The notes beneath the pieces were generated by a model, which was given only the letters and a program-made list of their open reading frames with translations, was not told the DNA's origin and searched no databases. From Octopus sinensis (Eukaryota): a stretch of 64,000 nucleotides of DNA. Each line of letters opens with the position of its first letter. Position 1 is the stretch's first letter. Positions 27,852 through 54,526 of the stretch are shown here, piece by piece. Location of the stretch: NCBI RefSeq assembly GCF_006345805.1, contig NC_043007.1:12834001-12898000 (forward strand), written 5' to 3'. The position numbers and the translations under genes were made by a program.

Positions 27852-28218
27852 ATGTGGCTGTGTGGTAAGTAGCTTGTTTACCAACCACATGGTTCTGGGT
27901 TCAGTCCCACTGCGTGGCATCTTGGGCAAAGCCTTGTGAGTGGATTTGGTAGACAGAAACTGAAAGAAGCCCGTCGTATATATGTACATATATATGTATG
28001 TCTGTGTGTTTGTGTGTCTGTGTTTGTCCCCCTAGCATTGCTTGACAACCGATGCTGGTGTGTTTATGTCCCCGTCACTTAGCGGTTCGGCAAAAGAGAC
28101 CGATAGAATAAGTACTGGGCTTACAAAAGAATGTCCCGGAACGATTTGCTCGATTAAAGGCGGTGCTCCAGCATGGCCGCAGTCAAATGACTGAAACAAG
28201 TAAAAGAGTAAAAGAGAT
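27852..28218 (+). mobile_element. Family C SINE
   Basis: Full body and GTAAAAGAGTAAAAGAG tail. Confidence 0.85.
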
Positions 28219-28246
28219 ATGAATATATACATATATATATATGTAC

Positions 28247-28352
28247 ATACCTACAGATTCCAACATTCCAGCAATTCCAGACATTCCAGACATTCCACAC
28301 ATTCCAGCGATTCCAGGTATTCCAGACATCCACAAATTCAACACATTCCAGC
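28247..28352 (+). repeat. Degenerate (ACATTCCAG)n cap at the left end of the composite satellite
   Basis: CATTCCAGACATTCCAGACATTCCACACATTCC. Confidence 0.85.
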
Positions 28353-28440
28353 TATTTAAAAATTTTTGGTAAAAAATTTTTTGAAAGTTTTTTTGGAAAT
28401 TTTTGGTCAAAATATTTTTATTATTTTTGGTCAAAACTCT

Positions 28441-31400
28441 TTTTGGGTTGGCTATTTGGGTTTGCTATTTGGCTTGGCTATTTGGATTGGCTATTTGGGT
28501 ATGCTATTTGTGTTGGCTATTTGTGTTAGCTATTTGGGTTGGCAATTTGGGTTTGCTATTTGGCTTGGCAATTTGGCTTGGTAATTTTGGGTTGGCTGTT
28601 TTGGTTTGCAATTTGGCTTTGCTATTTGGGTTTGCTATTTGGGTATGCTATTTGTGTTGGCTATTTGGCTTTGATTTGGCTAGGAAATTTGGCTGGGCAA
28701 TTTGGCTTGGCTATTTGGCTCGGCTATTTGGGTTGGCTATTTGGGTTAGTTATTTGACTAGGTTATTTGGGTTGGCTATTTGGGTTAGCTATTTGAGTTG
28801 GCTATTTGGATTTGCTTTTTGGGTTGGCTAACAGCCAAATAGCCTCGCCAAATAGCTAAGACAAATAGTCACCCCAAAAAGCACACACAAATACCTAACC
28901 TAAATAGCCAAGCCAAATAGTCAAGCCAAAGAGTAAACCCAAATAGCCAACCCAAACAGCCAAACCAAATAGCCGAGCCAAATAGCGAAGACCATACCCA
29001 ACTCAAATAGCAAACCAAATAGCCAACACAAATAGCCTAGCCAAAAAGCAAAGCCAAATAGCCAGACCAAATAGGCAAGCCAAATAGCCAACCCAAATAG
29101 CAAACACAAATAGCCAACCCAAATAGCCAACCCAAATAGCAAACCCAAATAGCAAACCCAAATAGCCAACACAAATAGCCGAGCTGAATAGCCAAGCCAA
29201 ATAGCAAACACTAATAGCAAACCCAAATAGCCAAGCCAAATAGCAAACACAAATAGCCAACCCAAATAGCCTAGCCAAATAGCCAACGCAAAAAGCAAAT
29301 CCAAATAGCCAACTCAAATAGCCAACGCAAAAAGCAAATCCAAATAGCCAACTCAAATAGCCAACCCAAATAGCCGACCCAAATAGCTATGCCAAATAGC
29401 CAAGCCAAATAGCCAAGCCAAATTTCCTAGCCAAATCCTAAGCCAAATAACCAACACAAATAGCATACTCAAATAGCCAACCAAAATAGCCAAACCAAAT
29501 AGCAAACCAAAATAGCCAACCCAAATAGCTAACCCAAATAGTCAAGCCAAATAGCTAACCCGAATAGCCAACACAAATAGCCAACCCAAATAGCCTAGCC
29601 AAATAGCCAAGCCAACTATCCAACCCAAATAGGAAACACAAATAGCCAACCCAAATAGCAAACACAAATAGCCAACCCAAATAGCCAAGCCAAATGACCA
29701 AGCCAAATAGCCTAGCCAAAAGCAAAGCCAAAAGCAAATAGCCAAATAGCCAACCCAAATAGGAAGCCTAAATAGCCAAACCAAATAGCCAACCCAAATA
29801 GCAAACCCAAATAGCCACACCAAATAGTCAAGCCAAAAAGCAAACCCAAATAGCCAACCCAAACAGCCAACCCTAATAGCCAAGTCAAATAGCCTAGCCA
29901 AATGCTTAGCCAAATAGCCAACACAAATAGCATAACCAAATAGCCAACACAAATAGCCAAGCCAAATAGCAAACCAAAATAGCAAACCAAAATCGCCAAC
30001 CCAAAGAGCCAAGCCAAATTGCCAAGTCAAATAGCAAACCCAAAAAGCCAATTCAAATAGCCAACACAAATAGCCGAGCCGAATAGCCAAGCCAAATAGC
30101 AAACACTAATAGCAAACCCAAATAGCCAAGCCAAATAGCAAACCAAAATACCCAACCCAAACAGCAAACACAAATAGCCAACCCAAATAGCCTAGCCAAA
30201 TAGCCAACGCAAAAAGTAAATCCAAATAGCCAACTCAAATAGCTAACCCAAATAGCTAACCCGAATAGCCAACCCAAATAGCCGACCCAAATAGCCATGC
30301 CAAATAGCCAACCATAATAGCCAAGTCAAATAGCCTAGCCAAATGCTTAGCCCGAATAGCCAACACAAATAGCCAACCCAAATAGCCAAGCCAAATAGCA
30401 AACCAAAATAGCTAACCTAAATAGCATACTTAAATAAGCCAAGCCAAATTGCCAATTCAAATAGCAAACCCAAAAAGCCAATCCAAATAGCCAACTCAAA
30501 TAGCTAAACTAAATAGCCAACCCAAAGTTGGCTATTTGAGCTCGACAACCCAAATAGGCAAGCCAAATCGCCAAGCCAAATAGCCAACCGAAATAGCAAA
30601 CCCAAATAGCCAACCGAAATAGCAAAGCCAAATAGCCAACTCAAATAGCAAACCCAAGTAGCCAATCCAAAGAGCCAAGCCAAATAGCCAAACAAAATAG
30701 CCTAGCCACATAGCCAAGCCAAATAGCCAACTCAAATATGGCATGGCTATTTGGGTTTGCTATTTGGCTTGGCATTTTGGATTGGATATTTGGGTATGCT
30801 ATTTGTGTTGGCTATTTGTCTTAGCTATTTGGCTAGGCTATTTGTCTTGGATATGTGGCTTGGCTATTTGGGGTTGGCTATTTGTGTTTGCTATTTGGGT
30901 TGGCAATTTGGGTTTGCTATGTGGCTTGGCAATTTGGCTTGGCTATTTGGGTTGGCTATTTTGGTTCGCTATTTGGCTTGGCTGTTTGTGTTGGCTATTT
31001 GAGTACGCTATTTGTGTTGGCTATTTGGCTAGGAAATTTGGCTTGGCTATTTGGCATGGCTATTTGGGTGTGCTATTCGGGTTGGCTATTCGGGTTAGCT
31101 ATTTGGCTTAACTATTTGGCTATTTGCTATTTGGCTTGGCTTTTTGGCTAGGCTATTTGGCTTGGTCATTTGGCTTGGCTATTTGGGTTAGCTATTTGAG
31201 TTGGCTATTTGGATTTGCTATTTGGGTTGGCTATTTGGCTAGGTTATTTGGGTTGGCTATTTGTGTTTGCTGTTTGGTTTGGCTGTTTTGGTTTGCTATT
31301 TGGCTTGGCTATTTGGCTTGACTATTTATGTTTGCTATTTATGTTTGCTATTTGGGTTGGCTATTTGGCTTGCCTATTTGGCTTGCCTATTTGGCTTTGC

Positions 31401-34400
31401 TATTTGGCTAGGCTATTTGTGTTGGCTATTTGGGTTTGCTATTTGAATTGGCTATTTGGCTTGGCTATTTGGCTTGGCTATTTGGTTTGGCTATTTGGGT
31501 TGGCTATTGGGGTTGGCTATTTGGCTTTGCTATTTCGGTTGGCTATTTCGGTTGGCTATTTGGCATGGTTATTTGGCTTGCCTATTTGGGTTGTTTAGCT
31601 CAAATAGCCAACTTTGGGTTGGCTATTTGGGTTAGCTAATTAGGTTGGCTATTTGGTTTCCTTTTTGGCTTGACTATTTGGCTTGGCTATTTTTGGATTT
31701 GCTATTTTGCTTGGCTATTTGGCTTGGTTTTTGGCTAGGCTATTTGGCTTGGTCATTTGGCTTGGCTATTGGGGTTGGCTTTTTGTGTTTGCTATTTGGG
31801 TTGGCTATTTGTGTTTCCTATTTGGGTTGGATAGTTGGCTTGGCTATTTGTGTAAGCTATTTCGATTGGCTATTTGGGTTTGCTATTTGGCTTGGCAATT
31901 TGGATTGGCTATTTGGGTTGGCTATATTGGTTTGGTTTTTGGCTTGGCTTATTTAAGTATGCTATTTAGGTTGGTTATTTTGGTTTGCTCTTTGGTTTGG
32001 CTATATGGTTATGCTATTTGTGTTGGCTATTTGGCTAAGCATTTGGCTAGGCCATTTGGCTTGGCTATTTGGCTTGGCTATTTTGGATATCTATTTGGGT
32101 TGGCTATTTGGGTTGGCTATTTGGGTTGGCAATTTGGCTTGGCTTTTTGGGTTGGCTATTTGGGTATGCTATTTGTATTGGCTAATTGGCTTAGCTTTTT
32201 GGCTTGGCTATTTTTATTGACTATTTGGGTTGCCTATTTGGCTTGGCTATTTCGGTTGGCTGTTTGGGTTGGCTTTTTGGATTGGCTTTTTGGGTTGGCT
32301 ATTTGTGTTGGCTATTTGACTTAGCTATTTGGCTAGGCTATTTGGCTTGGCTATTTGGGTTGGCTATTTGGGTTGGTTATTTGGGTTTGCTCTTTGGCTT
32401 GGCAATTTGGCTTGGCTATTTGGGTTGGCTGTTTTGGTTTGCTCTTTGGCTTTGCTATTTGGGTTTGCTATTTGGGTATGCTATTTGTGTTGGCTATTTG
32501 GCTTGGCATTTGGCTAGGAAATTTGGCTGGGCAATTTGGCTTGGCTATTTGGCCGGCTATTTGCTTGGGTATTTGGGTTGGCTATTTGGGTTAGCTATTT
32601 GGCTTGGCTATTTCGGTTGACTATTTGGCTTAGCTATTTGACTAGGTTTTTGGGTTGGCTATTTGGGTTAACTATTTGAGTTGGCTATTTGGATTTGCTT
32701 TTTGGGTTGGCTAACAGCCAAATAGCCTCGCCAAATAGCTAAGACAAATAGTCACCCCAAAAAGCACACACAAATACCTAACCTAAATAGCCAAGCCAAA
32801 TAGTCAAGCCAAAGAGTAAACCCAAATAGCCAACCCAAACAGCCAAACCAAATAGCCGAGCCAAATAGCGAAGCCAAATACCCAACTCAAATAGCAAACC
32901 CAAATAGCCAACACAAATAGCCTAGCCAAAAAGCAAAGCCAAATAGCCAGACCAAATAGGCAAGCCAAATAGCCAACCCAAATAGCAAACACAAATAGCC
33001 AACCCAAATAGCCAACCCAAATAGCAAACCCAAATAGCAAACCCAAATAGCCAACACAAATAGCCGAGCTGAATAGCCAAGCCAAATAGCAAACACTAAT
33101 AGCAAACCCAAATAGCCAAGCCAAATAGCAAACACAAATAGCCAACCCAAATAGCCTAGCCAAATAGCCAACGCAAAAAGCAAATCCAAATAGCCAACTC
33201 AAATAGCCAACGCAAAAAGCAAATCCAAATAGCCAACTCAAATAGCCAACCCAAATAGCCGACCCAAATAGCTGTGCCAAATAGCCAAGCCAAATAGCCA
33301 AGCCAAATAGCCAAGCCAAATTTCCTAGCCAAATCCTAAGCCAAATAACCAACACAAATAGCATACTCAAATAGCCAACCAAAATAGCCAAACCAAATAG
33401 CAAACCAAAATAGCCAACCCAAATAGCTAACCCAAATAGTCAAGCCAAATAGCTAACCCAAATAGCCAACACAAATAGCCAACACAAATAGCCAACCCAA
33501 ATAGCCTAGCCAAATAGCCAAGCCAACTATCCAACCCAAATAGGAAACACAAATAGCCAACCCAAATAGCAAACACAAATAGCCAACCCAAATAGCCAAG
33601 CCAAATGACCAAGCCAAATGACCAAGCCAAATAGCCTAGCCAAAAACAAAGCCAAAAGCAAATAGCCAAATAGCCAACCCAAATAGGAAGCCTAAATAGC
33701 CAAACCAAATAGCCAACCCAAATAGCAAACACAAATAGCCACACCAAATAGTCAAGCCAAAAAGCAAACCCAAATAGCCAACCCAAGCAGCCAACCCTAA
33801 TAGCCAAGTCAAATAGCCTAGCCAAATGCTTAGCCAAATAGCCAACACAAATAGCATAACCAAATAGCCAACACAAATAGCCAAGCCAAATAGCAAACCA
33901 AAATAGCAAACCAAAATCGCCAACCCAAAGAGCCAAGCCAAATTGCCAAGTCAAATAGCAAACCCAAAAAGCCAATTCAAATAGCCAACACAAATAGCCG
34001 AGCCGAATAGCCAAGCCAAATAGCAAACACTAATAGTAAACCCAAATAGCCAAGCCAAATAGCAAACCAAAATACCCAACCCAACAGCAAAACAAAATAG
34101 CCAACCCAAATAGCCTAGCCAAATAGCCAACGCAAAAAGTAAATCCAAATAGCCAACTCAAATAGCTAACCCAAATAGCTAACCCGAATAGCCAACCCAA
34201 ATAGCCGACCCAAATAGCCATGCCAAATAGCCAACCATAATAGCCAAGCCAAATAGCCTAGCCAAATGCTTAGCCCGAATAGCCAACACAAATAGCCAAC
34301 CCAAATAGCCAAGCCAAATAGCAAACCAAAATAGCTAACCTAAATAGCATACTTAAATAAGCCAAGCCAAATTGCCAAGTCAAATAGCAAACCCAAAAAG

Positions 34401-37400
34401 CCAATCCAAATAGCCAACTCAAATAGCTAACCTAAATAGCCAACCCAAAGTTGGCTATTTGAGCTAGACAACCCAAATAGGCAAGCCAAATCGCCAAGCC
34501 AAATAGCCAACCGAAATAGCAAACCCAAATAGCCAACCGAAATAGCAAAGCCAAATAGCCAACTCAAATAGCAAACCCAAGTAGCCAATCCAAAGAGCCA
34601 AGCCAAATAGCCAAACAAAATAGCCTAGCCACATAGCCAAGCCAAATAGCCAACTCAAATATGGCATAGCTATTTGGGTTTGCTATTTGGCTTGGCATTT
34701 TGGATTGGATATTTGGGTATGCTATTTGTGTTGGCTATTTGTCTTAGCTATTTGGCTAGGCTATTTGTCTTGGATATGTGGCTTGGCTATTTGGGTTGGC
34801 TATTTGTGTTTGCTATTTGGGGTTGGCAATTTGGGTTTGCTATGTGGCTTGGCAATTTGGCTTGGCTATTTGGGTTGGCTATTTTGGTTCGCTATTTTGC
34901 TTGGCTATTTGAGTACGCTATTTGTGTTGGCTATTTGGCTAGGAAATTTGGCTTGGCTATTTGGCATGGCTATTTGGGTGTGCTATTTGGGTTGGCTATT
35001 CGGGTTAGCTATTTGGCTTAACTATTTGGCTATTTGCTATTTGGCTTGGCTTTTTGGCTAGGCTATATGGCTTGGTCATTTGGCTTGGCTATTTGGGTTA
35101 GCTATTTGAGTTGGCTATTTGGATTTGCTATTTGGGTTGGCTATTTGGCTAGGTTATTTGGGTTGGCTATTTGTGTTTGCTGTTTGGGTTGGCTGTTTTG
35201 GTTTGCTATTTGGCTTGGCTATTTGGCTTGGCTATTTCGGTTGACTATTTATGTTTGCTATTTGGGTTGGCTATTTGGCTTGCCTATTTGGTTTGGCTAT
35301 TTGGCTTGCCTATTTGGCTTGCCTATTTGGCTTTGCTATTTGGCTAGGCTATTTGTGTTGGCTATTTGGGTTTGCTATTTGAGTTGGCTATTTGGCTTGG
35401 CTATTTGGCTAGGCTATTTGGTTTGGCTATTTGGGTTGGCTATTGGGGTTGGCTATTTGGCTTTGCTATTTCGGTTGGCTATTTGGCATGGCGATTTGGC
35501 TTGCCTATTTGGGTTGTCTAGCTCAAATAGCCAACTTTGGGTTGGCTTTTTGGGTTAGCTAATTAGGTTGGCTATTTGGTTTCCTTTTTGGCTTGACTAT
35601 TTGGCTTGGCTATTTTTGGATTTGCTATTTTGCTTGGCTATTTGGCTTGGTTTTTGGCTAGGCTATTTGGCTTGGTCATTTGGCTTGGCTATTTGGGTTG
35701 GCTTTTTGTGTTTGCTATTTGGGTATGCTATTTGTGTTGGCTATTTGGCTTGGCATTTGGCTAGGAAATTTGGCTGGGCAATTTGGCTTGGCTATTTGGC
35801 CCGGCTATTTGGCTTGGGTATTTGGGTTGGCTATTTGGGTTAGCTATTTGGCTTGGCTATTTCGGTTGACTATTTGGCTTAGCTATTTGACTAGGTTATT
35901 TGGGTTGGCTATTTGGGTTAACTATTTGAGTTGGCTATTTGGATTTGCTTTTTGGGTTGGCTAACAGCCAAATAGCCTCGCCAAATAGCTAAGACAAATA
36001 GTCACCCCAAAAAGCACACACAAATACCTAACCTAAATAGCCAAGCCAAATAGTCAAGCCAAAGAGTAAACCCAAATAGCCAACCCAAACAGCCAAACCA
36101 AATAGCCGAGCCAAATAGGAAATACCCAACTCAAATAGCAAACCCAAATAGCCAACACAAATAGCCTAGCCAAAAAGCAAAGCCAAATAGCCAGACCAAA
36201 TAGGCAAGCCAAATAGCCAACCCAATAGCAAACACAATAGCCAACCCAAATAGCCAACCCAAATAGCAAACCCAAATAGCAACCCAAATAGCCAACACAA
36301 ATAGCCGAGCTGAATAGCCAAGCCAAATAGCAAACACTAATAGCAACCCAATAGCCAAGCCAAATAGCAAACACAAATAGCCAACCCAAATAGCCTAGCC
36401 AAATAGCCAACGCAAAAAGCAATCCAAATAGCCAACTCAAATAGCCAACGCAAAAAGCAAATCCAAATAGCCAACTCAAATAGCCAACCCAAATAGCCGA
36501 CCCAAATAGCTGTGCCAAATAGCCAAGCCAAATAGCCAAGCCAAATTTCCTAGCCAAATCCTAAGCCAATAACCAACACAAATAGCATACTCAAATAGCC
36601 AACCAAAATAGCCAAACAAATAGCAAACCAAAATAGCCAACCCAAATAGCTAACCCAAATAGTCAAGCCAAATAGCTAACCCAATAGCCAACACAAATAG
36701 CAACACAAAAATAGCCAACCCAAATAGCCTAGCCAAATAGCCAAGCCAACTATCCAACCCAAAGGAAACACAAAGCCAACCCAAATAGCAAACACAATAG
36801 CCAACCCAAATAGCCAAGCCAAATGACCAAGCCAAATAGCCTAGCCAAAAACAAAGCCAAAAGCAAATAGCCAAATAGCCAACCCAAATAGGAAGCCTAA
36901 ATAGCCAAACCAAATAGCCAACCCAAATAGCAAACCCAAATAGCCACACCCAATAGTCAAGCCAAAAAGCAAACCCAAATAGCCAACCCAAGCAGCCAAC
37001 CCTAATAGCCAAGTCAAATAGCCTAGCCAATGCTTAGCCAAATAGCCAACACAAATAGCATAACCAAATAGCCACACAAATAGCCAAGCCAAAGGCAAAC
37101 CAAAATAGCAAACCAAAATCGCCAACCCAAAGAGCCAAGCCAAATTGCCAAGTCAAATAGCAAACCCAAAAAGCCAATTCAAATAGCCAACACAAATAGC
37201 CGAGCCGAATAGCCAAGCCAAATAGCAACACTAATAGTAAACCCAAATAGCCAAGCCAAATAGCAAACCAATAGCCAACCCAACAGCAAACACAAATAGC
37301 CAACCCAAATAGCCTAGCCAAATAGCCAACGCAAAAAGTAAATCCAAATAGCCAACTCAAATAGCTAACCCAAATAGCTAACCCGAATAGCCAACCCAAA

Positions 37401-40400: not shown

Positions 40401-43400
40401 AAATAGCATACTCAAATAGCCAACCAAATAGCCAAACCAAATAGCAAACCAAATAGCCAACCCAAATAGCTAACCCAATAGTCAAGCCAAATAGCTAACC
40501 CAAATAGCCAACAAAAATAGCCTACCAAATAGCCAACCAAAATAGCCTAGCCAATAGCCAAGCCAACTATCAACCCAAATAGGAAACACAAATAGCCAAC
40601 CCAAATAGCAAACACAAATAGCCAACCCAAATAGCAAGCCAAATGACCAAGCCAAATAGCCTAGCCAAAAGCAAAGCCAAAGCAAATAGCCAAATAGCCA
40701 ACCCAAATAGGAAGCCTAATAGCCAAACCAAATAGCCAACCCAAATAGCAAACCCAAATAGCCACACCAAATAGTCAAGCCAAAAAGCAAACCCAAATAG
40801 CCAACCCAAACAGCCAACCCCATAGCCAAGTCAAATAGCCTAGCCAATGCTTAGCCAATAGCCAACACAAATAGCATAACCAAATAGCCAACACAAAGCC
40901 AAGCCAAATAGCAAACCAAAATAGCAAACCAAAATCGCCAACCCAAAGAGCCAAGCCAAATTGCCAAGTCAAATAGCAAACCCAAAAAGCCAATTCAAAT
41001 AGCCAACACAAATAGCCGAGCCGAATAGCCAAGCCAAATAGCAAACACTAATAGCAAACCCAAATAGCCAAGCCAAATAGCAAACCAAATAGCCAACCCA
41101 AACAGCAAACACAAATAGCAACCCAAATAGCCTAGCCAAATAGCCAACGCAAAAAGTAATCCAAATAGCCAACTCAAATAGCTAACCCAAATAGCTAACC
41201 CGAATAGCCAACCCAAATAGCCGACCCAAATAGCCATGCCAAATAGCCAACCATAATAGCCAAGCCAAATAGCCTAGCCAAATGCTTAGCCCAAAATAGC
41301 CAAGCCAAATAGCAAACCAAAATAGCTAACCTAAATAGCATACTTAAATAAGCCAAGCCAAATTGCCAAGTCAAATAGCAAACCCAAAAAGCCAATCCAA
41401 ATAGCCAACTCAAATAGCTAACCTAAATAGCCAACCCAAAGTTGGCTATTTGAGCTCGACAACCCAAATAGGCAAGCCAAATCGCCAAGCCAAATAGCCA
41501 ACCGAAATAGCAAACCCAAATAGCCAACCGAAATAGCAAAGCCAAATAGCCAACTCAAATAGCAAACCCAAGTAGCCAATCCAAAGAGCCAAGCCAAATA
41601 GCCAAACAAAATAGCCTAGCCACATAGCCAAGCCAAATAGCCAACTCAAATATGGCATGGCTATTTGGGTTTGCTATTTGGCTTGGCATTTTGGATTGGA
41701 TATTTGGGTATGCTATTTGTGTTGGCTATTTGTCTTAGCTATTTGGCTAGGCTATTTGTCTTGGATATGTGGCTTGGCTATTTGGGGTTGGCTATTTGTG
41801 TTTGCTATTTGGGTTGGCAATTTGGGTTTGCTATGTGGCTTGGCAATTTGGCTTGGCTATTTGGGTTGGCTATTTTGGTTCGCTATTTGGCTTGGCTATT
41901 TGAGTACGCTATTTGTGTTGGCTATTTGGCTAGAAAATTTGGCTTGGCTATTTGGCATGGCTATTTGGGTGTGCTATTTGGGTTGGCTATTCGGGTTAGC
42001 TATTTGGCTTAACTATTTGGCTATTTGCTATTTGGCTTGGCTTTTTGGCTAGGCTATTTGGCTTGGTCATTTGGCTTGGCTATTTGGGTTAGCTTTTGAG
42101 TTGGCTATTTGGATTTGCTATTTGGGTTGGCTATTTGGCTAGGTTATTTGGGTTGGCTATTTGTGTTTGCTGTTTGGGTTGGCTGTTTTGGTTTGCTATT
42201 TGGCTTGGCTATTTGGCTTGGCTATTTGGGTTGACTATTTATGTTTGCTATTTGGGTTGGCTATTTGGCTTGCCTATTTGGTTTGGCTATTTGGCTTGCC
42301 TATTTGGCTTTGCTATTTGGCTAGGCTATTTGTGTTGGCTATTTGGGTTTGCTATTTGAGTTGGCTATTTGGCTTGGCTATTTGGCTAGGCTATTTGGTT
42401 TGGCTATTTGGGTTGGCTATTGGGGTTGGCTATTTGGCTTTGCTATTTCGGTTGGCTATTTGGCATGGCGATTTGGCTTGCCTATTTGGGTTGTCTAGCT
42501 CAAATAGCCAACTTTGGGTTGGCTATTTGGGTTAGCTAATTAGGTTGGCTATTTGGTTTCCTTTTTGGCTTGACTATTTGGCTTGGCTATTTTTGGATTT
42601 GCTATTTTGCTTGGCTATTTGGCTTGGTTTTTGGCTAGGCTATTTGGCTTGGTCATTTGGCTTGGCTATTTGGGTTGGCTTTTTGTGTTTGCTATTTGGG
42701 TTGGCTATTTGTGTTTCCTATTTGGGTTGGATAGTTGGCTTGGCTATTTGGCTAAGCTATTTGGATTGGCTATTTGGGTTTGCTATTTGGCTTGGCAATT
42801 TGGATTGGCTATTTGGGTTGGCTATATTGGTTTGGTTTTTGGCTTGGCTTATTTAAGTATGCTATTTAGGTTGGTTATTTTGGTTTGCTCTTTGGTTTGG
42901 CTATTTGGGTTGGCTATATGGTTATGCTATTTATGTTGGCTATTTGGCTAAGCATTTGGCTTGGCTATTTGGCTTGGCTATTTGGCTTGGCTATTTTGGA
43001 TATCTATTTGGGTTGGCTATTTGGGTTGGCAATTTGGCTTGGCTTTTTGGGTTGGCTATTTGGGTATGCTATTTGTATTGGCTAATTGGCTTAGCTTTTT
43101 GGCTTGGCTATTTTTATTGACTATTTGGGTTGCCTATTTGGCTTGGCTATTTCGGTTGGCTGTTTGGGTTGGCTTTTTGGATTGGCTTTTTGGGTTGGCT
43201 ATTTGTGTTGGCTATTTGGCTTAGCTATTTGGCTAGGCTATTTGGGTTGGCTATTTGGGTTGGCTATTTGGGTTGGTTATTTGGGTTTGCTCTTTGGCTT
43301 GGCAATTTGGCTTGGCTATTTGGTTGGCTGTTTTGGTTTGCTCTTTGGCTTTGCTCTTTGGGTTTGCTATTTGGGTATGCTATTTGTGTTGGCTATTTGG

Positions 43401-44604
43401 CTTGGCATTTGGCTAGGAAATTTGGCTGGGCAATTTGGCTTGGCTATTTGGCCCGGCTATTTGGCTTGGGTATTTGTGTTGGCTATTTGGGTTAGCTATT
43501 TGGCTTGTCTATTTCGGTTGACTATTTGGCTTAGCTATTTGACTAGGTTATTTGTGTTGGCTATTTGGGTTAACTATTTGAGTTGGCTATTTGGATTTGC
43601 TTTTTGGGTTGGCTAACAGCCAAATAGCCTCGCCAAATAGCTAAGACAAATAGCCATCCCAAAAAGCACACACAAATAGCTAACCCAAATAGCCAAGCCA
43701 AATAGTCAAGCCAAAGTGTAAACCCAAATAGCCAACCGAAACAGCCAAACCAAATAGCCTAGCCAAATAGGCAAGCCAAATAGCCAACTCAAATAGCAAA
43801 CCCAAATGGCCAACATAAATAGCCTAGCCAAATAGCAAACCCAAATAGGCAAGCCAAATAGCCAAACCAAATAGCAAACCCAAATAGCCAACCCAAATAG
43901 CCAACCCAAATTGCTATATGACTTGGCTATTTGGCTTGGCTATTTGGGATGGCTATTTGGCTTAGCTATTTGGCTAGGTTTTTTGGGTTGGCTATTTGGG
44001 TTTGCTATTTGGCTTGGCAATTTGGCTTGGCTATTTGGGTTGGCTATTTTGGGTTGCTATTTGACTTGGCTATTTGGCTTGGCTATTTGGGTTTGCTATT
44101 GGTGTTGGCTATTTTGCTTGGCTTTTTGGCTTGGCTATTTCGCTTGGCTGTTTGGGTTGGCGATTTGGGTTGGCTATTCGGGTTAGCTATTTGGTTGGCT
44201 ATTTGGCATTGCTATTTGTGTTGGCTATTTGTGTTGGCTTTTTGGGTTTGCTATTTGGGTTAGCTATTTAGGTTGGCTATTTGGCTTTGCAGTTTGGGTT
44301 GGCCATTTGGGCTTCCTATTTGGGTTGGCTATTTGGCTATTTGGTATTTGGCTTGGCTATTTGGCTTGGCTTTTTGGCTAGTCTATTTAGCTTGGTCATG
44401 TGGCTTGGATATTTGGGTTAGCTATTTGTGTATCCCATTTGGGTTGGATAGTTGGCTTAGCTATTTTGCTAGGCTATTTGGGTAGGTTATTTGGGTTTGC
44501 TATTTGGGTGGGCTATTTGGGTTTGCTTTTTGGCTTGGCTATTTGGTTTGGCTATTTGGTTTGGCTATTTGGGTTGGCTATTTGGGTTAGCTATTTGGCT
44601 TAGC
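28441..44604. repeat. 14-bp satellite (TTGGS TTKGC TATT)n in 11 alternating-orientation blocks, ~3.8-kb higher-order unit
   Basis: Junction TTGGCTAACAGCCAA centred at 28831, 32714, 35964, 39798, 43616; junction CTCAAATATGGCAT at ~30739, 34661, 37856, 41651; last flip at 43911. Confidence 0.95.
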
Positions 44605-47283
44605 TCTGTCGGCACCCTCTTTGATCTATGTCGGTACCCTCTTGGATCTCTGTCGGCACCCTCTTTGATCTATGTCGGTACCCTCTTTGATCTATGTCGG
44701 CATCCTCTTTGATCTCTGTCGACACTCTCTTTGATCTCTATCGGCACTCTCTTTCATCTCTGTCGGTACCCTCTTTGATCTCTGTCGGCACCCTCTTTGA
44801 TCTGTGTCAGCACTCCTCTTTGATCTCTGTCAACACTCTCTTTGATCTCTGTCGGCACCCTCTCTGATCTTTGTCGACATCCTCTTCGATCTCTGTCGGC
44901 ACCCTCTTTGAACTCTGTCGGCACCCTCTTTGATCTCTGTCAGCACCCTCTTTGATCTATATCGGCATTCTCTTTGATCTCTGTCGGCACCCTCTTTGAT
45001 CTGTGTCAACACTCCTCTTTTATCTGCGTAAACACTCCTCTTTGATCTCTGTCTGCACCCTCTTTGATCTTTGTGAACACTCCTCTTTGATCTCTGTCGG
45101 CATCATCTTTGATCTCTGTCGACACCCTCTTTGATCTCTGTCGGCACCCTCTTTGATCTCTGTCGACACCCTCTTTGACCTCTGTCGGCACCCTCTGACA
45201 TTCCTGACATTTGAACCGGTTCGATCAGATTTGAACCAGTTTGAACCAGCTTGATCCTGTTTGAACCGGTTTGAACCGGTTTGATCCGGTTTGAGCCGGT
45301 TTGATTTGGTTTGATCCGGTTTGAACCGGTTTAATCTGGTTTGAACCCGTTTGATCCGGTTTGAACCGGTTTGAACCGGTTTGATCGGATTTGTACCGGT
45401 TTGTCAGCACCGTCTTTGATCTTTGTCGGCACACTCATTGATCTCTGTCGGCACCGTCTTTGATATTTGTCGCCACACTCTTTGATCTCTGCCGGCACCG
45501 TCTTCGGTCTCTGTCGGCACACTCTTTGCTCTCTGTCGGCACCGTCTTTGATCTCTGACATTCCTCACATTCCTCACATTTGAGACGTTCCTGACATTTG
45601 AACTGGTTCCATCAGGCTTGATCCAGTTTGATCCGGTTTGAACGGGTTTGATCCGTCTTGATCCGGTTTGATTCGGTTTGTACCGGTTTGAACAGGTTTG
45701 ATCCAGTTTATACCGGTTTGATCCGGTTTGAACCGGTTTGATCTGGTGTGTACCGGTTTGTCGGCAACATCTTTGATCTTTGTAAGTACACCCTTGGATC
45801 TCTTTCGGCACCGTCTTTGATCTCCGTCGGCACCGTCTTTGATCTCTGTCGGCAAAGTCTTTGATCTCTGTCTGCACCATCTTTGATCTCTGTCGGCACC
45901 GTCTTTGATCTCTCACATTCCTTACATTCCAATTATTCCTGAACTTCCAGACATTCCTGACATTCCAAACATTCATGACAATCTAGACATTCCAGACATT
46001 CCTGACATTCTTTGATCTATATCGGCACTCTCTTTAATCACTTTGATCTGTGTCAACACCCCTCTTTGATCTATGTCGGCACCCTCTTTGATCTCTGTCG
46101 GCACCCTCTTTAATCTCTGTCGGCACCCTCTTTGATCTCTGTCGGCACCCTCTTTGATATCTGTCGAAAGCCTCTTTGATCTATGTCGGCACTCTCTTTG
46201 ATCTATCTCGGTACCCTCTTGGATCTATGTCGGCACCTTCTTTGATCTATGTCGGTACCCTCTTTGATCTATGTCGGCACCCTCTTTGATCTATGTCGGC
46301 ATCCTCTTTGATCTGTGTCAACACTCCTCTTTGATCTCTTTCGGCACCGTCTTTGATCTCTGTCGGCAACCTCTTTGATCTGTGTGAACACTCCTCTTTG
46401 ATCTGTGTGAACATTCCTCTTTGATCTCTGTCGGCACACTCTTTGATCTCTGTTGACATCCTCTTCGATCTCTGTCGGCACCCTCTTTGAACTCTGTCGG
46501 CATCCTCTTTGATCTCTCTCGGCACCATCTTTGATCTATGTCAGCGCCCTCTTCGATCTCTGTCGGCCTCATCTTTGATCTCTGTAAACACACACTTTGA
46601 TCTTTGTCGGAACACTCTTTGATCTCTGTCGGCACCGTCTTTGATCTCTGACATTCCTCACATTCCAGACATTCCTGACATTCCAGAAATTCCGGACATT
46701 CCAGACATTCCAGACATTCCTGACATTCCTGACATTTGAACCGGTTCGATCAGGCTTGATACAGTTTGAAACAATTTGATCCGGTTTGAACCGGTTTGAT
46801 CTGGTTTGAACCGGTTTGAACCAATTTGATCCGGTTTGAACCGGTTTGAAACGGTTTGTACCGGTTTGATACGGTTTGAACCGGTTTCATCTGGTTATAT
46901 CCGGTTTCAACCGGTTTGACCCGGTCTCAACCGGTTTGGACCGGTCTGAACCGGTTTGATTCGGTTTGTACTGGTTTGTCGGCACCGTCTTTGATCTTTG
47001 TCGGCACACTCTTTGATCTCTGTCGGCATCGTCTTTGATCCATGACATTCCTCACATTCCGAATTCCAGACATTCCTGAAATTGCAGACATTCCTGACAT
47101 TCAAGACATTCCTGACATTCCAGACATTCCAGACATTCCTGACATTCCAGACATTCCTGACATTCCAGACATTCCGGACATTCCTGACATTCCCGACATT
47201 CCTGACATTTGAACCGGTTCGATCAAGCTTGATCCAGTTTGAACCGTTTTGACCAGGTTTTAACCGGTTTGAACCGGTTTGAT
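44605..47283 (+). repeat. Tripartite nested satellite: A (22 bp CCCTCTTTGATCTCTGTCGGCA), B (9 bp ACATTCCWG), C (10 bp TTTGAWCCGG)
   Basis: Blocks read directly: A44606, B45196, C45212, A45403, B45556, C45598, A45761, B45913, A46009, B46649, C46736, A46978, B47042, C47209. Confidence 0.95.
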
Positions 47284-49764
47284 ATGTTAGGGATGTCAGG
47301 AATGTCAGGAATGTCAGAGATCAATGACGGTGCCGACAGAGATCAAAGAGGGTGCTGACAAAGATCAAAGACGGTGCCGACAAAACGGTCCAAATCTTAT
47401 CAAACCGGTTCAAACCGGATTAAATCTCAGGAATGTCAGGAATGTCTGGAATGTCAGGAATGTCAGGAATGTCTGGAATGTCAGGAATGTCTGGAATGTC
47501 AGGAACGTCAGGAATGTCTGGAATGTCAGGAATGTCAGGAATGCCTGGAATGTCAGGAATGTCAGGAATCAAACCGGATTAAATCTCACGAATGTCAGGA
47601 ATGTATGGAATGTATGGAATGTCTGAGATCAAAGACAGTGCCGACAGTGATCAAAGAGTGTGCAAACAAAGATCAAAGACGGTGCCGATAAACCGGTCCA
47701 AACTGCATCAAACCGGTTCAAACTGAATGAAACCGGTTCAAATATCAGGAATGTCAAAAATGTCAGGAACGTCAGGAATGTGTGGAATGTCAGGAATGTC
47801 AGGAATGTGTGGAATGTCAGGAATGACAGGAATGTGTGGAATGTCAGGAATGTCAGGAATGTCATATATCAAAGACGGTGCCGACAGAGGTCTAAGAGTG
47901 TGTCGACTTAGATCTAAGACGGTGGCGACAAATGTCAGGAATGTCTGGAATGTATGGAATGTCAGAGATCAAAGACGGTGCAAACAGAGACCAAAGTGTG
48001 TGCCAACAAAGATCAAATATGGTGACGATAAACCGGTCCAAACCGCATCAAACCGGTTCAAACGGGATTAAAACGGTTCAAACCAATTCAAACCTGATCA
48101 AACCGGTTCAAATGTCAGAAATGTCAGGAATGTCAGGAACGTCTGGAACGTCAGTAATGTCTGGAATGTCAGGAATGTCAGGAATGTCTGGAATATGAGG
48201 AATGTCATAGATCAAAGACGGTGCCGACAGAGATCTAGAGTGTGCCGACCAAGATGAAAGACGGAGGCGAGCAACCGGTTCAAACTAGATCAAACCGGTT
48301 CAAACCGGATTAAACCATTTCAAACCGGACCAAACCAGTTCAAACCGGATCATACCTGATCAAACTGGTTAAAATGTCAGGAATGTCAGGAATGTCTGGA
48401 ATGTCAGGAATGTCATAGATCAAAGACGGTGCCGACAGAGATCAAAGAGTGTTTCGACAAAGATCAAAGACGGTTAGGACAAACCGGTTCAAACCGGATC
48501 AAATGTCAGGAATGTCTGGAATGTTAGGAATGTCTGGAATGTCAGGAATGTTTGGAATGTCAGGAATGTCTGGAATGTCAGGAATGTCTGGAATGTCAGG
48601 AATGTCTGGAATGTCAGGAATGTCTAGAATGTCAGGAATGTCTGGATTTATGGAATGTCAGGAATGTGTGGAATGTCAGGAATGCCTGGAATGTCAGGAT
48701 GTCAGGATGTCTGGAATGTCAGGAATGTCTGTAATGTCTGGAATGTCAGGAATGTTTGGAATGTCAGGAATGTCTGGAATGTCAGGAATATCAGAGATCA
48801 AAGACAGTGTCGACATAGATCAAAGAGTGTGCCGACAAAGATCAAAGAGGGTGCCGACAAATGTCAGGAATGTCGACAAACCGGTCAAAACCGGATCAAA
48901 CTGTCTTTGATCTCCAGTTCGAACCGGATAAAACCGGTTCAAATGTCAGGAATGTCAGGAATGTCTGGAATGTAAGTAATGTTAGTAATGTCAGGAATGT
49001 CTGGAATGTCAGGAATGTCTGGAATATGAGGAATGTCATAGATCAAAGACAGTGCCGACAGAGATCTAGAGTGTGCCGACCAAGATGAAAGACGGAGGCG
49101 AACAACCGGTTCAAACTAGATCAAACCGGTTCAAACCGGATTAAACCATTTCAAACCGGACCAAACCAGTTCAAACCGGATCATACCTGATCAAACTGGT
49201 TAAAATGTCAGGAATGTCATGAATGTCATAGATCAAAGACGGTGCCGACAGAGATCAAAGAGTGTTTCGATCAAAGACGGTTCCGACAAACCGGTTCAAA
49301 CCGGATCATACCTGATCAAACTGGTTAAAATGTCAGGAATGTCATGAATGTCATAGATCAAAGACGGTGCCGACAGAGATCAAAGAGTGTTTCGATCAAA
49401 GACGGTTCCGACAAACCGGTTCAAACCGGATCAAACCGGAACAAACTGGATCAAACCGGTTTCAACCTGGTCAAACTGGTTCAAACCGGATCAAACCGGT
49501 TTATACCGCGTGAAACCGGTTCAAATGTCTGGAATGTCAGGAATGTTAGGAATGTCAGGAATGTCTGGAATGTCAGGAATGTCTGGAATGTTAGGAATGT
49601 CTGGAATGTCAGGAATGTCTGGAATGTCGGGAATATCAGGAATGTCAGAGATCAAAGACGGTGCCGACAGAGATCAAAGAGGGTGCCGACAAAGATCAAA
49701 GACGGTGTCGACAAACCGGTTTGAACCACATCAAACCGGTTCAAACTGGTTCAAAACGGTGCAA
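47284..49764 (-). repeat. Same tripartite satellite in inverted orientation
   Basis: GGAATGTCA, AGATCAAAGACGGTGCCGAC and AAACCGGTTC blocks joined by the reverse-complement junctions. Confidence 0.95.
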
Positions 49765-50410
49765 AGAGGGGAGGAAGAAATGTCGAACATTCCAGAGAGG
49801 GGGATTTGAGAAGTGAAGGTGAAGAAGGGAAGGAAGGAATGTTGAACATTCCAGAGAGGGGGATTTGAGAAATACAGGGGAGGAAGGGAAGGAGGGAATG
49901 TTGAACATTCCACAAAGAGGGATTTGAGAAATAAAGGGGAGGAAGGGAAGGAGGGAATGTTGAATATTCCAGAGAGGGGGATTTGAGAAGTGAAGGGGAG
50001 GAAGAGGAGGATGAAATGTTGAATATTCCAGAGAGGGGGATTATAGAAGTGAAGGGGAGGAAGGAATGTTGAACATTCCTGAGAAGGGGATTTTAGAAGT
50101 GAAAGGGAGGAAGGGATTGAAGGAATGTTGAAAATTCCAGAGAGGGGGATTTCACGAATGAAGGGAGGAAGCAATGTTGAACATACCACAGGGGGATTTG
50201 AGAAGTGAAGGGGAAGAAGGAATGTTTAACATTCCAGTGAGTGGGATTTTAGGAGAGAGGGGGAGGAAGGAATGTTGAACATTCCAGAGAGGGGGATTTG
50301 AGAAGTGAAGGGGTGGAAGGAATTTTTAACATTCCATAGAGAGGGATTTGAGAAGTGAAGGGGAGGAAGGGGAGGAAGGAATGTTGAACATTCCAGAGAT
50401 GGGGATTGGT
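49765..50410 (+). repeat. Purine-rich minisatellite, ~12 copies of a 48-60-bp unit
   Basis: GGAATGTTGAACATTCCAGAGAGGGGGATTTGAGAAGTGAAGGGGAGGAA repeated. Confidence 0.92.
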
Positions 50411-50570
50411 GAAGTTCCACACTTTCTAGAAATTCCACACATTCCACACATCCCACTCATTCCAGTCATTATAAACATTCTAGAAATTCCACACATTCCA
50501 AACATTCATGCCATTCCGTGACATTCCATACCTAGACGTGACGTGACATTCCATTTAACGTCATTTGATA
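50411..50570 (+). repeat. Right cap of the composite: CATTCC repeats grading into ACGTGACGTGAC / TTTAACGTCA
   Basis: Read directly; same motifs as 60528-61195. Confidence 0.75.
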
Positions 50571-50771
50571 TTCACAAAGGGAGGTCATCCCCTCTCGAAA
50601 ACCTAAGTGATACGCATGGACTGCAGTTTCGAGATTATTGTCTCTTGTCAACATACGCTAATCACCGGTTTTCGATGAGGGGAGACCTATTTGCGAATAT
50701 TCATTTAATGTTTTTCCCAGTAACCACTGTCACTGATTTCGAAAAACGGTCTGAAAGCAATAATAAATCTC

Positions 50772-53508: not shown

Positions 53509-53545
<37 letters not shown>

Positions 53546-54493: not shown

Positions 54494-54526
<33 letters not shown>

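What the first reader, a model, noticed from the sequence alone, without database searches (positions are those of the whole stretch)
28247..50570. The whole 22-kb block behaves as one capped composite element
Seen: it begins (28247-28352) and ends (50411-50555) with degenerate CATTCC repeats in the same orientation. Its modules join with no intervening unique DNA (TTGGCTTAGCT|CTGTCGGCACC at 44605; AAAACGGTGCAAAG|AGGGGAGG at ~49764). It contains no SINE and no (TA)n tract, whereas the flanks carry one every ~1 kb. CpG-rich motifs are preserved. Inference: a young or actively homogenised unit, possibly a mobile composite satellite family, with a smaller relative at 60528-61195.
Basis: partly seen in the sequence, partly recalled or inferred. 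Interest (0 to 1): 0.7.

Follow-up and report, generated by a model that had tools for sequence, protein, structure and literature searches.

The report
Satellite-DNA cluster in an octopus genome
The 22-kb block is a real, transposon-free cluster of at least five short tandem-repeat (satellite) families in an octopus-type genome, built by local amplification and inversions; nothing here shows it to be one capped, mobile element, so it is tidy but ordinary repeat biology.

Summary
The observations mostly hold. Degenerate CATTCC 9-mer arrays in the same orientation sit at both ends, the modules abut without unique DNA, and the block has no SINE or (TA)n tract although the flanks carry about one dispersed repeat per kb.

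The "one capped element" reading is not supported.
- The caps are worn edge copies of a 9-mer that is also abundant inside the block, on both strands.
- The parts differ in age. A 13-mer array forms a 3.9-kb higher-order repeat of two oppositely oriented halves, about 4 copies, 98-99.7% alike. The 22-mer/9-mer/10-mer section is a cyclic nested repeat in two inverted arms, only about 72-92% alike.
- I found no target-site duplication (>=6 bp) and no terminal inverted repeat (>=10 bp).
- The modules occur apart. An Octopus vulgaris chromosome carries a 9.2-kb array of the same 22-mer and 10-mer with no 9-mer, 13-mer, 59-mer or caps. The relative at 60.5 kb has only the 9-mer plus a TAACGTCA-rich repeat.

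Best reading: a locally evolving multi-family satellite cluster, kept free of transposons by recent amplification and turnover. No genome-wide survey was possible. Interest is low to moderate; I found no description of octopus satellites in the library searched.

The parts
28253..28356 (+). Left 'cap': about 11 degenerate units of the 9-mer module C (ACATTCCAG/GACATTCCA). It abuts the TA-rich tail of a SINE (27853-28246).
   Evidence: TRF; sequence; 84% identity to the 9-mer consensus against 91-92% for most interior arrays (one interior array, 45915-46010, is also 84%); SINE alignment.
28357..28441 (+). AT-rich degenerate spacer. It opens with GCTATTT and contains TTTTTGGTCAAAA units, so it may be a decayed 13-mer array.
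   Evidence: Sequence; TRF 24-bp period at 28391-28436. The 'decayed 13-mer' reading is inference.
28442..28832 (+). P0: partial plus-oriented 13-mer block (TTTGGGTTGGCTA). It corresponds to the distal end of the P half of the higher-order repeat.
   Evidence: 91-94% identical to the ends of P1, P3 and P4.
28833..32715 (.). Higher-order repeat unit 1 of the 13-mer satellite: M1 28833-30740 (13-mer on the - strand) plus P1 30741-32715 (+ strand).
   Evidence: M-M 98.4-99.7% and full-length P copies (P1, P3, P4) 98.6-99.1% identical in aligned columns; M against rc(P) only 83-87%, which is array background.
32716..35964 (.). Higher-order repeat unit 2: M2 32716-34663 plus P2 34664-35964. P2 lacks about 670 bp.
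35965..39799 (.). Higher-order repeat unit 3: M3 35965-37858 plus P3 37859-39799. It has many 1-bp indels relative to units 1 and 2.
39800..43617 (.). Higher-order repeat unit 4: M4 39800-41654 plus P4 41655-43617.
43618..43911 (-). M5: truncated fifth unit, covering the first 294 bp of an M half.
   Evidence: 90-95% identical to the starts of M1-M4.
43912..44603 (+). P5: older plus-oriented 13-mer array, not in register with the higher-order repeat.
   Evidence: Only 84-86% identical to any P block, which is background.
44604..47283 (+). Plus arm of the nested composite. It cycles 22-mer (A, CTCTGTCGGCACC[C/G]TCTTTGAT, 3-27 copies), then 9-mer (C, GACATTCC[A/T]), then 10-mer (B, TTTGA[A/T]CCGG), with conserved A>C, C>B and B>A junctions.
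   Evidence: TRF; sequence; segmentation; per-position variation.
47284..49765 (-). Minus arm of the same composite: c > a(x3, 66 bp) > b cycles, about 12 of them. This is the reverse complement of the A>C>B order. The orientation switch lies at the end of a 10-mer run whose core AACCGGTT is palindromic.
   Evidence: Arm-to-arm identity is only 80-92% over <=293 bp, so the arms are not a recent palindrome.
49766..50410 (+). About 11 copies of a 50-59-bp purine-rich repeat. Each copy has a head-to-head 9-mer core, GGAATGTT-G-AACATTCC.
   Evidence: TRF (period 59, 11.7 copies, 75% matches); sequence.
50411..50575 (+). Right 'cap': about 14 degenerate 9-mer units on the + strand. It ends in a vestige of the TAACGTCA-type repeat (GACGTGACGTGACATTCCATTTAACGTCATTT).
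   Evidence: (82% identity to consensus).
60528..61195 (-). Small relative: 9-mer x7, a 190-bp TAACGTCA-rich repeat, 9-mer x~30, then a 140-bp TAACGTCA-rich repeat. It has no 22-mer, 10-mer, 13-mer or 59-mer.

Best explanation
The block is an interstitial cluster of satellite DNA in an octopod genome. It is not a discrete element.

Five or six short-unit repeat families lie side by side: a 9-mer (C), a 13-mer (D), a 22-mer (A), a 10-mer (B), a 50-59-mer, and a trace of a TAACGTCA repeat (T). They evolved in place by the usual satellite mechanisms.

Shown:
1. The 13-mer array contains one inversion-bearing 3.9-kb segment that was recently amplified in tandem about 4 times. This is a higher-order repeat (HOR) whose two halves point in opposite directions.
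2. The A/C/B section is a nested repeat. An A>C>B super-unit with fixed junction sequences has been copied many times, and the run lengths inside each copy vary (A 3-27, C 1-33, B 1-20).
3. About half of the A/C/B section is inverted.
4. The two 'caps' are the most degenerate copies of module C and sit at the edges of the cluster.
5. The A+B pair exists as its own array in Octopus vulgaris.

Inferred:
- Slippage changes the run lengths. Unequal exchange or segmental duplication copies the larger units.
- The inversions arose by fold-back or template switching at quasi-palindromic repeats (AACCGGTT in B; the TTGGCT-AAC-AGCCAA junction in D).
- The 59-mer was born from a head-to-head c|C junction and was then amplified.
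- Recent amplification plus continuing turnover keeps transposons out.
- The degenerate caps are array edges that homogenisation reaches least.
- No cellular function is implied.
For: - HOR. Same-orientation blocks are 98.4-99.7% (M) and 98.6-99.1% (full-length P) identical, while neighbouring 13-mers match at only 73-78%. M against rc(P) is 83-87%, the same as out-of-register 13-mer arrays at 84-86%.
- Both junction types are conserved in every copy...GGCTA-ACAG-CCAAAT... and ...CAAATA-TGGCA-TGGCTATTTGG....
- The edge copies are more diverged: P0 91-94%, M5 90-95%, P5 at background.
- The nested A>C>B cycle and its exact reverse complement are shown.
- The composite is only about 72-92% self-similar, with a few local duplications reaching 97%.
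- Caps are 82-84% identical to the 9-mer consensus against 91-92% in most interior arrays.
- No TSD >=6 bp and no inverted terminal match >=10 bp.
- No dispersed repeat or (TA)n tract in 22.3 kb, against about 1 per kb in the flanks.
- Independent locus. O. vulgaris OX597818.1:51.12 Mb holds a 9.2-kb a_n/b_n array with the same consensus units, 0 CATTCC, 0 13-mers and different flanks.
- The C module occurs with T alone at 60.5 kb.
Against: - Only one outside locus and one in-window relative could be examined. The source genome itself could not be searched, so a family of full-length copies cannot be excluded.
- The two caps share orientation and the CCACACATTCC variant. That could mean a common origin as one interrupted C array, or a duplicated terminus.
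- The A+B pair occurs both in the window and in O. vulgaris at a place with no shared unique flank. If that place is a separate locus, some dispersal mechanism exists.
- The composite is TE-free although its units are 10-25% diverged. This needs ongoing turnover, which is inferred, not shown.
- Excess 1-bp indels in the central HOR copies mean that copy number and fine structure may be imperfectly assembled.
Confidence: 0.75

Rival explanations
1. One reading: the whole block, or its A/B/C core, is a mobile composite element. Candidates are a non-autonomous Helitron/Helentron (HINE-like) element or a foldback-type element that carries tandem arrays. The CATTCC arrays would be its termini and 60.5 kb a small copy.
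For: - CATTCC arrays in the same orientation at both ends.
- A 9-mer-bearing relative 10 kb away.
- The A+B pair is also found in O. vulgaris at a place with no shared unique flank.
- Two inverted arms built of 9/10/22-bp repeats recall the foldback-element terminal repeats of Drosophila (own knowledge).
- In oysters, satellite-like arrays are carried by Helentron non-autonomous elements (PMC7492417).
- A 104-nt inverted repeat lies 200 bp right of the block.
Against: - No TSD and no terminal inverted repeat or subTIR >=10 bp.
- The cap repeat is an internal module on both strands.
- The O. vulgaris A/B array lacks caps, C and D, and shares no array-adjacent flank with the window.
- The relative lacks A, B, D and the 59-mer, and its 9-mer points the other way.
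- The parts are of very unequal age.
- There is no coding capacity beyond repeat translations.
- A 64-nt stretch in each arm of the 104-nt inverted repeat matches an O. vulgaris sequence away from that species' satellite, so it may belong to a dispersed repeat.
Confidence: 0.1
2. Assembly artefact: the alternating orientation and the 4 near-identical 3.9-kb copies come from mis-assembly of long noisy reads (fold-back chimeras, or over- or under-collapsed repeats).
For: The central copies (M3, M4, P3) carry dozens of 1-bp indels relative to the outer copies but few substitutions. That is typical of unpolished long-read consensus. Repeat arrays are the hardest regions to assemble.
Against: - Fold-back or missed-adapter artefacts give near-identical inverted halves. 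Here inverted halves are only 83-87% alike while direct copies are about 99%.
- Both junction types recur exactly.
- Unit 2 has its own ~670-bp deletion, and 13-bp-multiple indels distinguish the copies.
- The A/B satellite is independently present in the O. vulgaris assembly.
- The artefact reading could affect copy number but not the existence or layout of the arrays.
Confidence: 0.07
3. Functional repeat locus: the arrays serve the cell. They might be a centromere-associated or heterochromatin-nucleating satellite, a small-RNA source, or a sink or landing pad for DNA-binding proteins. The most conserved unit cores resemble TCF (ATCAAAG), TEAD (GGAATG), Grainyhead/CP2 (AACCGGTT) and CRE half-site (ACGTCA) motifs.
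For: - Within units the least variable positions are TCTTTGAT(CT) in A and ACATTCC in C.
- The A and B consensus units are the same in the window and in O. vulgaris.
- Inverted arrays could yield double-stranded RNA.
- The motif resemblances come from my own knowledge and were not tested.
Against: - At 22 kb, about 9 kb from a gene and among SINE-rich DNA, it is too small for a regional centromere unless it is collapsed in the assembly.
- Short repeats match some factor motif by chance very often.
- No expression, binding or methylation data are available.
- Uneven variability within units is also produced by homogenisation alone.
Confidence: 0.05

Closest known systems
Higher-order-repeat satellite DNA, including arrays with strand inversions (e.g. 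human alpha and HSat arrays; Tribolium madens satellites with inversely oriented subunits; own knowledge)
   Same: - Short monomers are only 73-78% alike, but multi-kb units are about 99% alike.
- Array edges are more diverged than the centre.
- There are no TE insertions.
- An inversion is fixed inside the repeating unit.
   Different: - The unit here is about 300 monomers of 13 bp, split into two ~1.9-kb halves of opposite polarity.
- Only about 4 copies are present.
- The location is interstitial, next to a gene, not a megabase centromeric block.
[quoted passage not shown]
   Same: The A>C>B super-unit is a repeating unit made of three repeat types and evolves as a higher-order 'super-repeat', like the ajax-teucer example in that paper.
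   Different: - The human composites mix TEs, satellites and new subunits, and have defined unit lengths. Here all subunits are 9-22-bp tandem runs of freely varying length.
- The whole 22-kb block is not itself a repeated unit in the data available.
Helentron non-autonomous elements carrying satellite-like central repeats in the oyster Crassostrea gigas (Cg_HINE; PMC7492417)
   Same: A mollusc genome with tandem arrays at more than one place. One or two array types lie in consecutive order. There is no TSD.
   Different: - Cg_HINEs have conserved left and right flanks with 11-12-bp subTIRs, an internal complementary repeat, a microsatellite and a 3' palindrome. None of these was found at the block ends, nor shared between the window and the O. 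vulgaris locus.
- The octopus arrays are far longer (9-16 kb).
Foldback (FB) transposons of Drosophila, whose long terminal inverted repeats are built of short tandem repeats (own knowledge)
   Same: There are two inverted arms made of interleaved short tandem repeats (9, 10 and 22 bp).
   Different: - The arms meet directly with no middle segment, and they are only 80-92% alike.
- Their outer ends are not equivalent (A x27 on the left, b on the right).
- They are embedded in other satellites.
- There is no TSD.

Membership tests
Satellite DNA with higher-order repeat organisation | Head-to-tail tandem monomers over kilobases | tested here: met
   TRF finds 13-mer arrays of up to ~150 copies per block, 22-mer x27, 10-mer x24 and 9-mer x33.
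Satellite DNA with higher-order repeat organisation | Multi-monomer units much more alike than neighbouring monomers | tested here: met
   3.9-kb units are 98.4-99.7% identical in aligned columns (93-95% counting gaps), against 73-78% between adjacent 13-mers.
Satellite DNA with higher-order repeat organisation | No protein-coding content | tested here: met
   The ORFs in the block are periodic repeat translations. The only protein hit carrying the 22-mer module is an O. vulgaris 'hypothetical predicted protein' that is itself a translated array; the other hits match only the low-complexity 10-mer translation.
Composite repeat element (T2T-CHM13 sense) | A repeating unit made of three or more repeat types | tested here: met
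   This holds for the A>C>B super-unit: about 5 cycles on the + arm and about 12 on the - arm, with conserved junctions.
Composite repeat element (T2T-CHM13 sense) | The whole 22-kb block recurs as a unit | tested here: not met
   There is one copy in the window. The 60.5-kb relative and the O. vulgaris locus each hold only a subset of modules. A genome-wide count was not possible with these tools.
Non-autonomous Helentron/Helitron carrying tandem repeats (HINE) | 11-12-bp subterminal inverted repeats in the left and right flanks | tested here: not met
   There is no inverted match >=10 bp between 27300-28445 and 50405-51080, against a shuffle mean of 1.2.
Non-autonomous Helentron/Helitron carrying tandem repeats (HINE) | Conserved flank modules shared by different copies | tested here: not met
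   The flanks of the O. vulgaris A/B array match only dispersed-repeat copies elsewhere in the window, none next to the block. The sample is one locus.
Non-autonomous Helentron/Helitron carrying tandem repeats (HINE) | A 3' palindrome next to the right subTIR | tested here: inconclusive
   A 104-nt-arm inverted repeat lies at 50772-50996, 200 bp beyond the block. It is much larger than typical Helitron/HINE 3' hairpins (size from own knowledge). A 64-nt stretch in each arm matches an O. vulgaris sequence away from that species' satellite.
Foldback-type or other TIR transposon | Target-site duplication flanking the element | tested here: not met
   No shared k-mer >=6 between 28191-28256 and 50531-50650.
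Foldback-type or other TIR transposon | Equivalent inverted termini | tested here: not met
   The block's two ends are direct repeats, not inverted. The inverted A/C/B arms are internal and have non-equivalent outer ends.
Any mobile element | An empty orthologous or allelic site | not testable with these tools
   The nearest retrievable orthologue of the neighbouring BTB gene is only 59-65% identical, and its downstream DNA does not align.

The most novel reading that the evidence does not exclude
The 22-mer + 10-mer (+/- 9-mer) composite is a dispersing satellite family in octopods. It would seed new loci by a non-canonical route, such as excised circles, rolling-circle copies or capture by an unrecognised carrier element, and then diversify locally by fold-back inversion. 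The strand-alternating 13-mer higher-order repeat would be a product of the same fold-back amplification. The evidence does not exclude this: the A+B pair is also found in O. vulgaris at a place with no shared unique flank, while the carrier, if any, is unseen.
Probability: 0.1. Interest if true: 0.5.

Novelty: new member of a known kind. Interest (0 to 1): 0.25.

Why it matters
I found no description of cephalopod satellite DNA: four literature searches for octopus or cephalopod satellites and repeats returned nothing specific. This locus gives concrete consensus units for five families:
- 13-mer TTTGGGTTGGCTA
- 22-mer CTCTGTCGGCACC[C/G]TCTTTGAT
- 10-mer TTTGA[A/T]CCGG
- 9-mer GACATTCC[A/T]
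- a 59-mer with a palindromic core

It also shows a clear case of a higher-order repeat with built-in strand alternation, and of a nested repeat with fixed junctions and free run lengths.

Practical consequences:
- These arrays are being annotated as 'hypothetical proteins' in the O. vulgaris genome and should be masked.
- They flag places where long-read assemblies are poorly polished.
- They are ready-made FISH probes for octopus cytogenetics.

None of this changes how we think satellites evolve.

Tried and rejected
1. SMRTbell or fold-back read artefact for the alternating 13-mer blocks. Rejected: inverted halves are 83-87% alike while direct copies are about 99%.
2. A recent large palindrome for the two A/C/B arms. 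Rejected: the best inverted alignments are <=293 bp at 80-92%.
3. TSD and TIR search at the block ends. Nothing found.
4. Shared unique flanks between the block's right end, its left flank and the 60.5-kb relative. None found.
5. Rfam and tRNA scans of the window. No hits.
6. Empty-site test through the neighbouring BTB gene. Two protein searches, with the last exon and with a spliced 393-aa query, found only 58-65% identical relatives (P0001 transcript, P0002 genomic). The downstream DNA of locus L001 aligns only in the exons.
7. Exact-protein look-ups of four window ORFs, to identify the source assembly. Not on record.
8. Collection scans.
   - The 22-mer in metagenome contigs gave 17 single chance hits.
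   - The 13-mer dimer in prokaryote genomes gave one 3.5-copy chance hit in a cyanobacterial MAG.
   - The 9-mer trimer in viral contigs gave none.
9. Literature search for SINE sequence strings. No papers. The octopus assignment therefore rests on the O. vulgaris satellite and SINE matches.
10. Derivation of the 22-mer from the adjacent SINE or SINE-like repeat. Only weak similarity by eye, so not pursued.
Full report
**Setting**

The window is eukaryotic and octopod.
- It carries SINEs. One, at about 51091-51324, has a clear target-site duplication, TACCCAATGTAATATAT. Another family occurs at 27853-28246, 22892-23289 and 12957-13238.
- It is rich in (TA)n and (TATG)n tracts.
- A BTB-domain gene lies on the + strand. 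Its exons are at 15619-15684, 16544-16705 and 18126-19145, with GT/AG splice sites and a stop at 19145.
- The octopus assignment comes from two results. A translated piece of the block hits a protein named 'Hypothetical predicted protein [Octopus vulgaris]'. The O. vulgaris locus that encodes it shares the window's SINE families at 77-96% identity.
- The exact species could not be determined.
- The block starts about 9 kb downstream of the BTB stop codon.

**Check of the observation**

The two 'caps' are real.
- 28253-28356 holds about 11 units and 50415-50555 about 14 units of a 9-mer (ACATTCCAG / GACATTCCA). Both carry CATTCC on the + strand.
- Exact CATTCC is far above background there: 5 and 11 per kb, against 0-1 per kb elsewhere outside the block and its relative.

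The module joints at 44603/44604 and 49765/49766 have no unique DNA between them.

The block has none of the following:
- tracts of (TA)>=8, against 47 in the flanks;
- matches to the SINE family that abuts its left end;
- similarity to any flank sequence other than 60.5-61.2 kb, which takes 167 of 167 hits.

The flanks carry 27 repeated segments in 28.2 kb and 14 in 13.4 kb. About 22 insertions would therefore be expected in 22.3 kb of equally old DNA.

Three points need qualifying.
- The cap repeat is also a major internal module, on both strands.
- The CpG statement holds only for the 22-mer/10-mer part (o/e 0.83-0.88). The 13-mer array is at 0.16. The flanks are at 0.65 and 0.90, so CpG retention is uninformative. 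In the 10-mer the CpG positions are among the more variable.
- The relative at 60.5 kb shares only the 9-mer.

**Anatomy 1: the 13-mer array (28442-44603, 16 kb)**

- TRF shows 13-mer (TTTGGGTTGGCTA) blocks that flip strand every ~1.9 kb. An orientation profile confirms this.
- The two kinds of flip junction are the same in every repeat. P>M is ...GGGTTGGCTA-ACAG-CCAAATAGCC..., seen five times. M>P is ...CTCAAATA-TGGCA-TGGCTATTTGG..., seen four times.
- Same-orientation blocks are 98.4-99.7% (M1-M4) and 98.6-99.1% (P1, P3, P4) identical in aligned columns.
- An M block against the reverse complement of a P block is only 83-87% identical. Out-of-register 13-mer arrays give the same figure, 84-86%.
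- So this is not a set of true palindromes. It is a 3.9-kb higher-order repeat that contains one old inversion and has been amplified in tandem about 4 times.
- Unit 2 has lost about 670 bp of its P half.
- The partial units at the two ends are more diverged: P0 91-94%, M5 90-95%. The last 690 bp (P5) is an older 13-mer array out of register.
- Copies differ by 0.3-1.3% in substitutions.
- M3, M4 and P3 carry dozens of 1-bp indels. I read these as unpolished long-read consensus, so the copy number should be treated as provisional.

**Anatomy 2: the nested composite (44604-49765)**

- Labelling every position by its best-matching unit gives a strict cycle. It runs 22-mer (A), then 9-mer (C), then 10-mer (B), then back to A, on the + strand up to 47283. 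From 47284 to 49765 the order is c > a > b, which is the exact reverse complement.
- The junction sequences recur...TCTTTGATCTCTGACATTCC... for A>C...GACATTTGAACCGG... for C>B, and ...ACCGGTTTGTCGGCACC... for B>A.
- Run lengths vary freely: A 3-27, C 1-33, B 1-20. In the minus arm A is nearly always a 66-bp triplet.
- Overall self-similarity is about 72-92%. The best arm-to-arm inverted alignments are <=293 bp at 80-92%. A few local duplications are young, for example 125 bp x 2.3 at 97%.
- This section is therefore older than, or less homogenised than, the 13-mer higher-order repeat.
- The orientation switch at 47283 lies at the end of a 10-mer run. The 10-mer core AACCGGTT is a perfect palindrome, so the array is about 80% self-complementary. 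This is a plausible substrate for fold-back inversion, but that is inference.

**Anatomy 3: the right end**

- 49766-50410 holds about 11 copies of a 50-59-bp purine-rich unit. Its core, GGAATGTT-G-AACATTCC, is a head-to-head pair of 9-mer cores.
- This array sits exactly between the minus-oriented c runs and the plus-oriented right cap. It looks like an amplified inversion junction (inference).
- The right cap ends in GACGTGACGTGACATTCCATTTAACGTCATTT. This is a vestige of the TAACGTCA-rich repeat that alternates with the 9-mer at 60528-61195.

**Termini**

- The caps are the most degenerate 9-mer arrays, at 84% and 82% identity to consensus. Most interior arrays are at 91-92%; one interior array, 45915-46010, is also 84%.
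- There is no shared k-mer >=6 that could be a target-site duplication.
- There is no inverted match >=10 bp between the two boundary regions. The only direct matches are the 9-mers themselves.
- The left cap abuts the TA-rich tail of a complete SINE.
- The right cap is followed by unique DNA and then a 104-nt-arm inverted repeat at 50772-50996. A 64-nt stretch in each arm matches an O. vulgaris sequence away from that species' satellite, so the repeat may be built from a dispersed repeat.

**Evidence from elsewhere**

- An ORF that merely translates A/B/C repeats (45404-45976, minus strand) was scored against 1.84 billion representative proteins. It found one protein, P0007, that is clearly the same 22-mer and 10-mer in translation. 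The remaining hits match only the low-complexity 10-mer translation.
- P0007 is annotated in Octopus vulgaris, assembly GCA_951406725.2, chromosome OX597818.1 at 51.12-51.14 Mb.
- That locus (L021) holds a 9.2-kb array, 2150-11363, of alternating a_n and b_n runs. The consensus units are the same as in the window: CTCTGTCGGCACCGTCTTTGAT and TTTGA[T/A]CCGG.
- It has zero CATTCC 9-mers, zero 13-mers, zero 59-mers, no caps and no TE insertions.
- Its boundaries lie inside SINE or SINE-like fragments. Its flanks match the window only through dispersed repeats, none of them adjacent to the block.
- Together with the C+T relative at 60.5 kb, this shows that the modules combine differently at different places: {A,B}, {C,T}, {A,C,B}, {D}.
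- What survives is a recurring A+B pairing.

**Interpretation**

The simplest account is a locally evolving cluster of satellite families.
- Slippage changes the run lengths of the 9-22-bp units.
- Unequal exchange or segmental duplication copies larger units: the A>C>B super-unit and the 3.9-kb D unit.
- Occasional fold-back inversions flip segments.
- Recent amplification plus turnover keeps transposons out.
- The array edges, which homogenisation reaches least, decay into the 'caps'.

Against the published O. vulgaris repeat history, with a SINE/LINE expansion at Jukes-Cantor distance ~0.065 (PMC13282606), the 0.3-1.3% divergence of the D units is much younger. This fits the absence of SINE insertions.

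The anatomy, the identities, the lack of TSD and TIR, and the separate occurrence of modules are shown. The mechanisms and the order of events are inferred.

**Comparison with known kinds**

- The block behaves like classical higher-order-repeat satellite DNA.
- It does not meet the tested criteria for the mollusc precedent of mobile satellite carriers, the oyster Cg_HINE Helentrons. Those have subTIRs, conserved flanks and a 3' palindrome (PMC7492417). Searches found none of these here.
- It does not meet the criteria for a foldback-type transposon either.
- I found no description of these octopus satellites in the searchable literature.
- I therefore file it as a new member of a known kind.

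**Limits**

- The source genome could not be searched.
- Only one external locus was obtained.
- No empty-site test was possible, because the closest retrievable orthologue of the BTB gene is 59-65% identical.
- A dispersing composite family therefore remains possible at about 10%.

Noticed in passing
window 50772-50996: A near-perfect hairpin lies 200 bp right of the block: 104-nt arms, 95% complementary, 17-nt loop, DNA fold -122.7 kcal/mol, z = -31. A 64-nt stretch in each arm (50805-50868 and its mirror) matches O. vulgaris L021 14476-14538 at 91%. It may therefore be an inverted duplication of a dispersed-repeat fragment, or a foldback/MITE-like element.
   Followed up: partly
window 15619-19145 (+): The last three detectable exons of a BTB/POZ-domain gene, with clean GT/AG splice sites. 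The BTB core is 100% identical to a 567-aa cephalopod transcript product (P0001), and the low-complexity tail is fast-evolving.
   Followed up: partly
L021 10001-10753 (O. vulgaris OX597818.1, ~51.12-51.14 Mb) and L021 1-7468: The O. vulgaris annotation calls a 250-aa 'hypothetical predicted protein' that is simply the 22-mer/10-mer satellite read as protein. A second gene model, 840 aa, also overlaps the array. These are probably spurious models caused by unmasked satellites.
   Followed up: partly
window 35965-41654: The central copies of the 3.9-kb repeat (M3, P3, M4) carry dozens of 1-bp indels against the outer copies but few substitutions. This probably marks unpolished long-read consensus inside the repeat. 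The true copy identity may be higher and the copy number uncertain.
   Followed up: partly
window 44604-50575 and 60528-61195: The least variable cores of the repeat units coincide with textbook binding motifs: A has AGATCAAAG (TCF/LEF), C has GGAATG (TEAD), B has AACCGGTT (Grainyhead/CP2), and T has ACGTCA (CRE half-site). The motif assignments are from memory, and such matches are easy to get by chance with short repeats. Not tested.
   Followed up: no
window 6335-6724, 8166-8320, 16814-16940; L021 2020-2150: A dispersed repeat with a GCCAGTGGCACATAAAAAGCACC-type core forms its own local tandem arrays, for example 66 bp x 5.3 at 90%. The O. vulgaris A/B array begins inside a copy of this repeat (...ctggtgccatgtaaaaa|aagagtgtgccgac...). 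This may be another dispersed-repeat-to-tandem transition. Its relation to the 22-mer is unproven.
   Followed up: no
window 19928-20033: A 32-bp internal piece of a dispersed repeat seen in the SINE at 51091-51324 (TATCGACCCCAGTGCGTAACTGGTACCTAATT) is tandemly triplicated at 98% identity.
   Followed up: no
window 53384-57880: A 4.5-kb stretch is almost entirely (TA)n, (TATG)n and (ATAC)n microsatellite, for example 54831-56012. GC is as low as 25% and GC skew reaches +0.8. This is far denser than in the left flank.
   Followed up: no
window 38702-38731 (and the equivalent positions in P2 and P4): A 30-bp patch inside the plus-oriented 13-mer block reads in the opposite orientation (GCTCAAATAGCCAAC). 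This looks like a micro-inversion. Shared ORF translations suggest the same patch recurs in P2 and P4.
   Followed up: no
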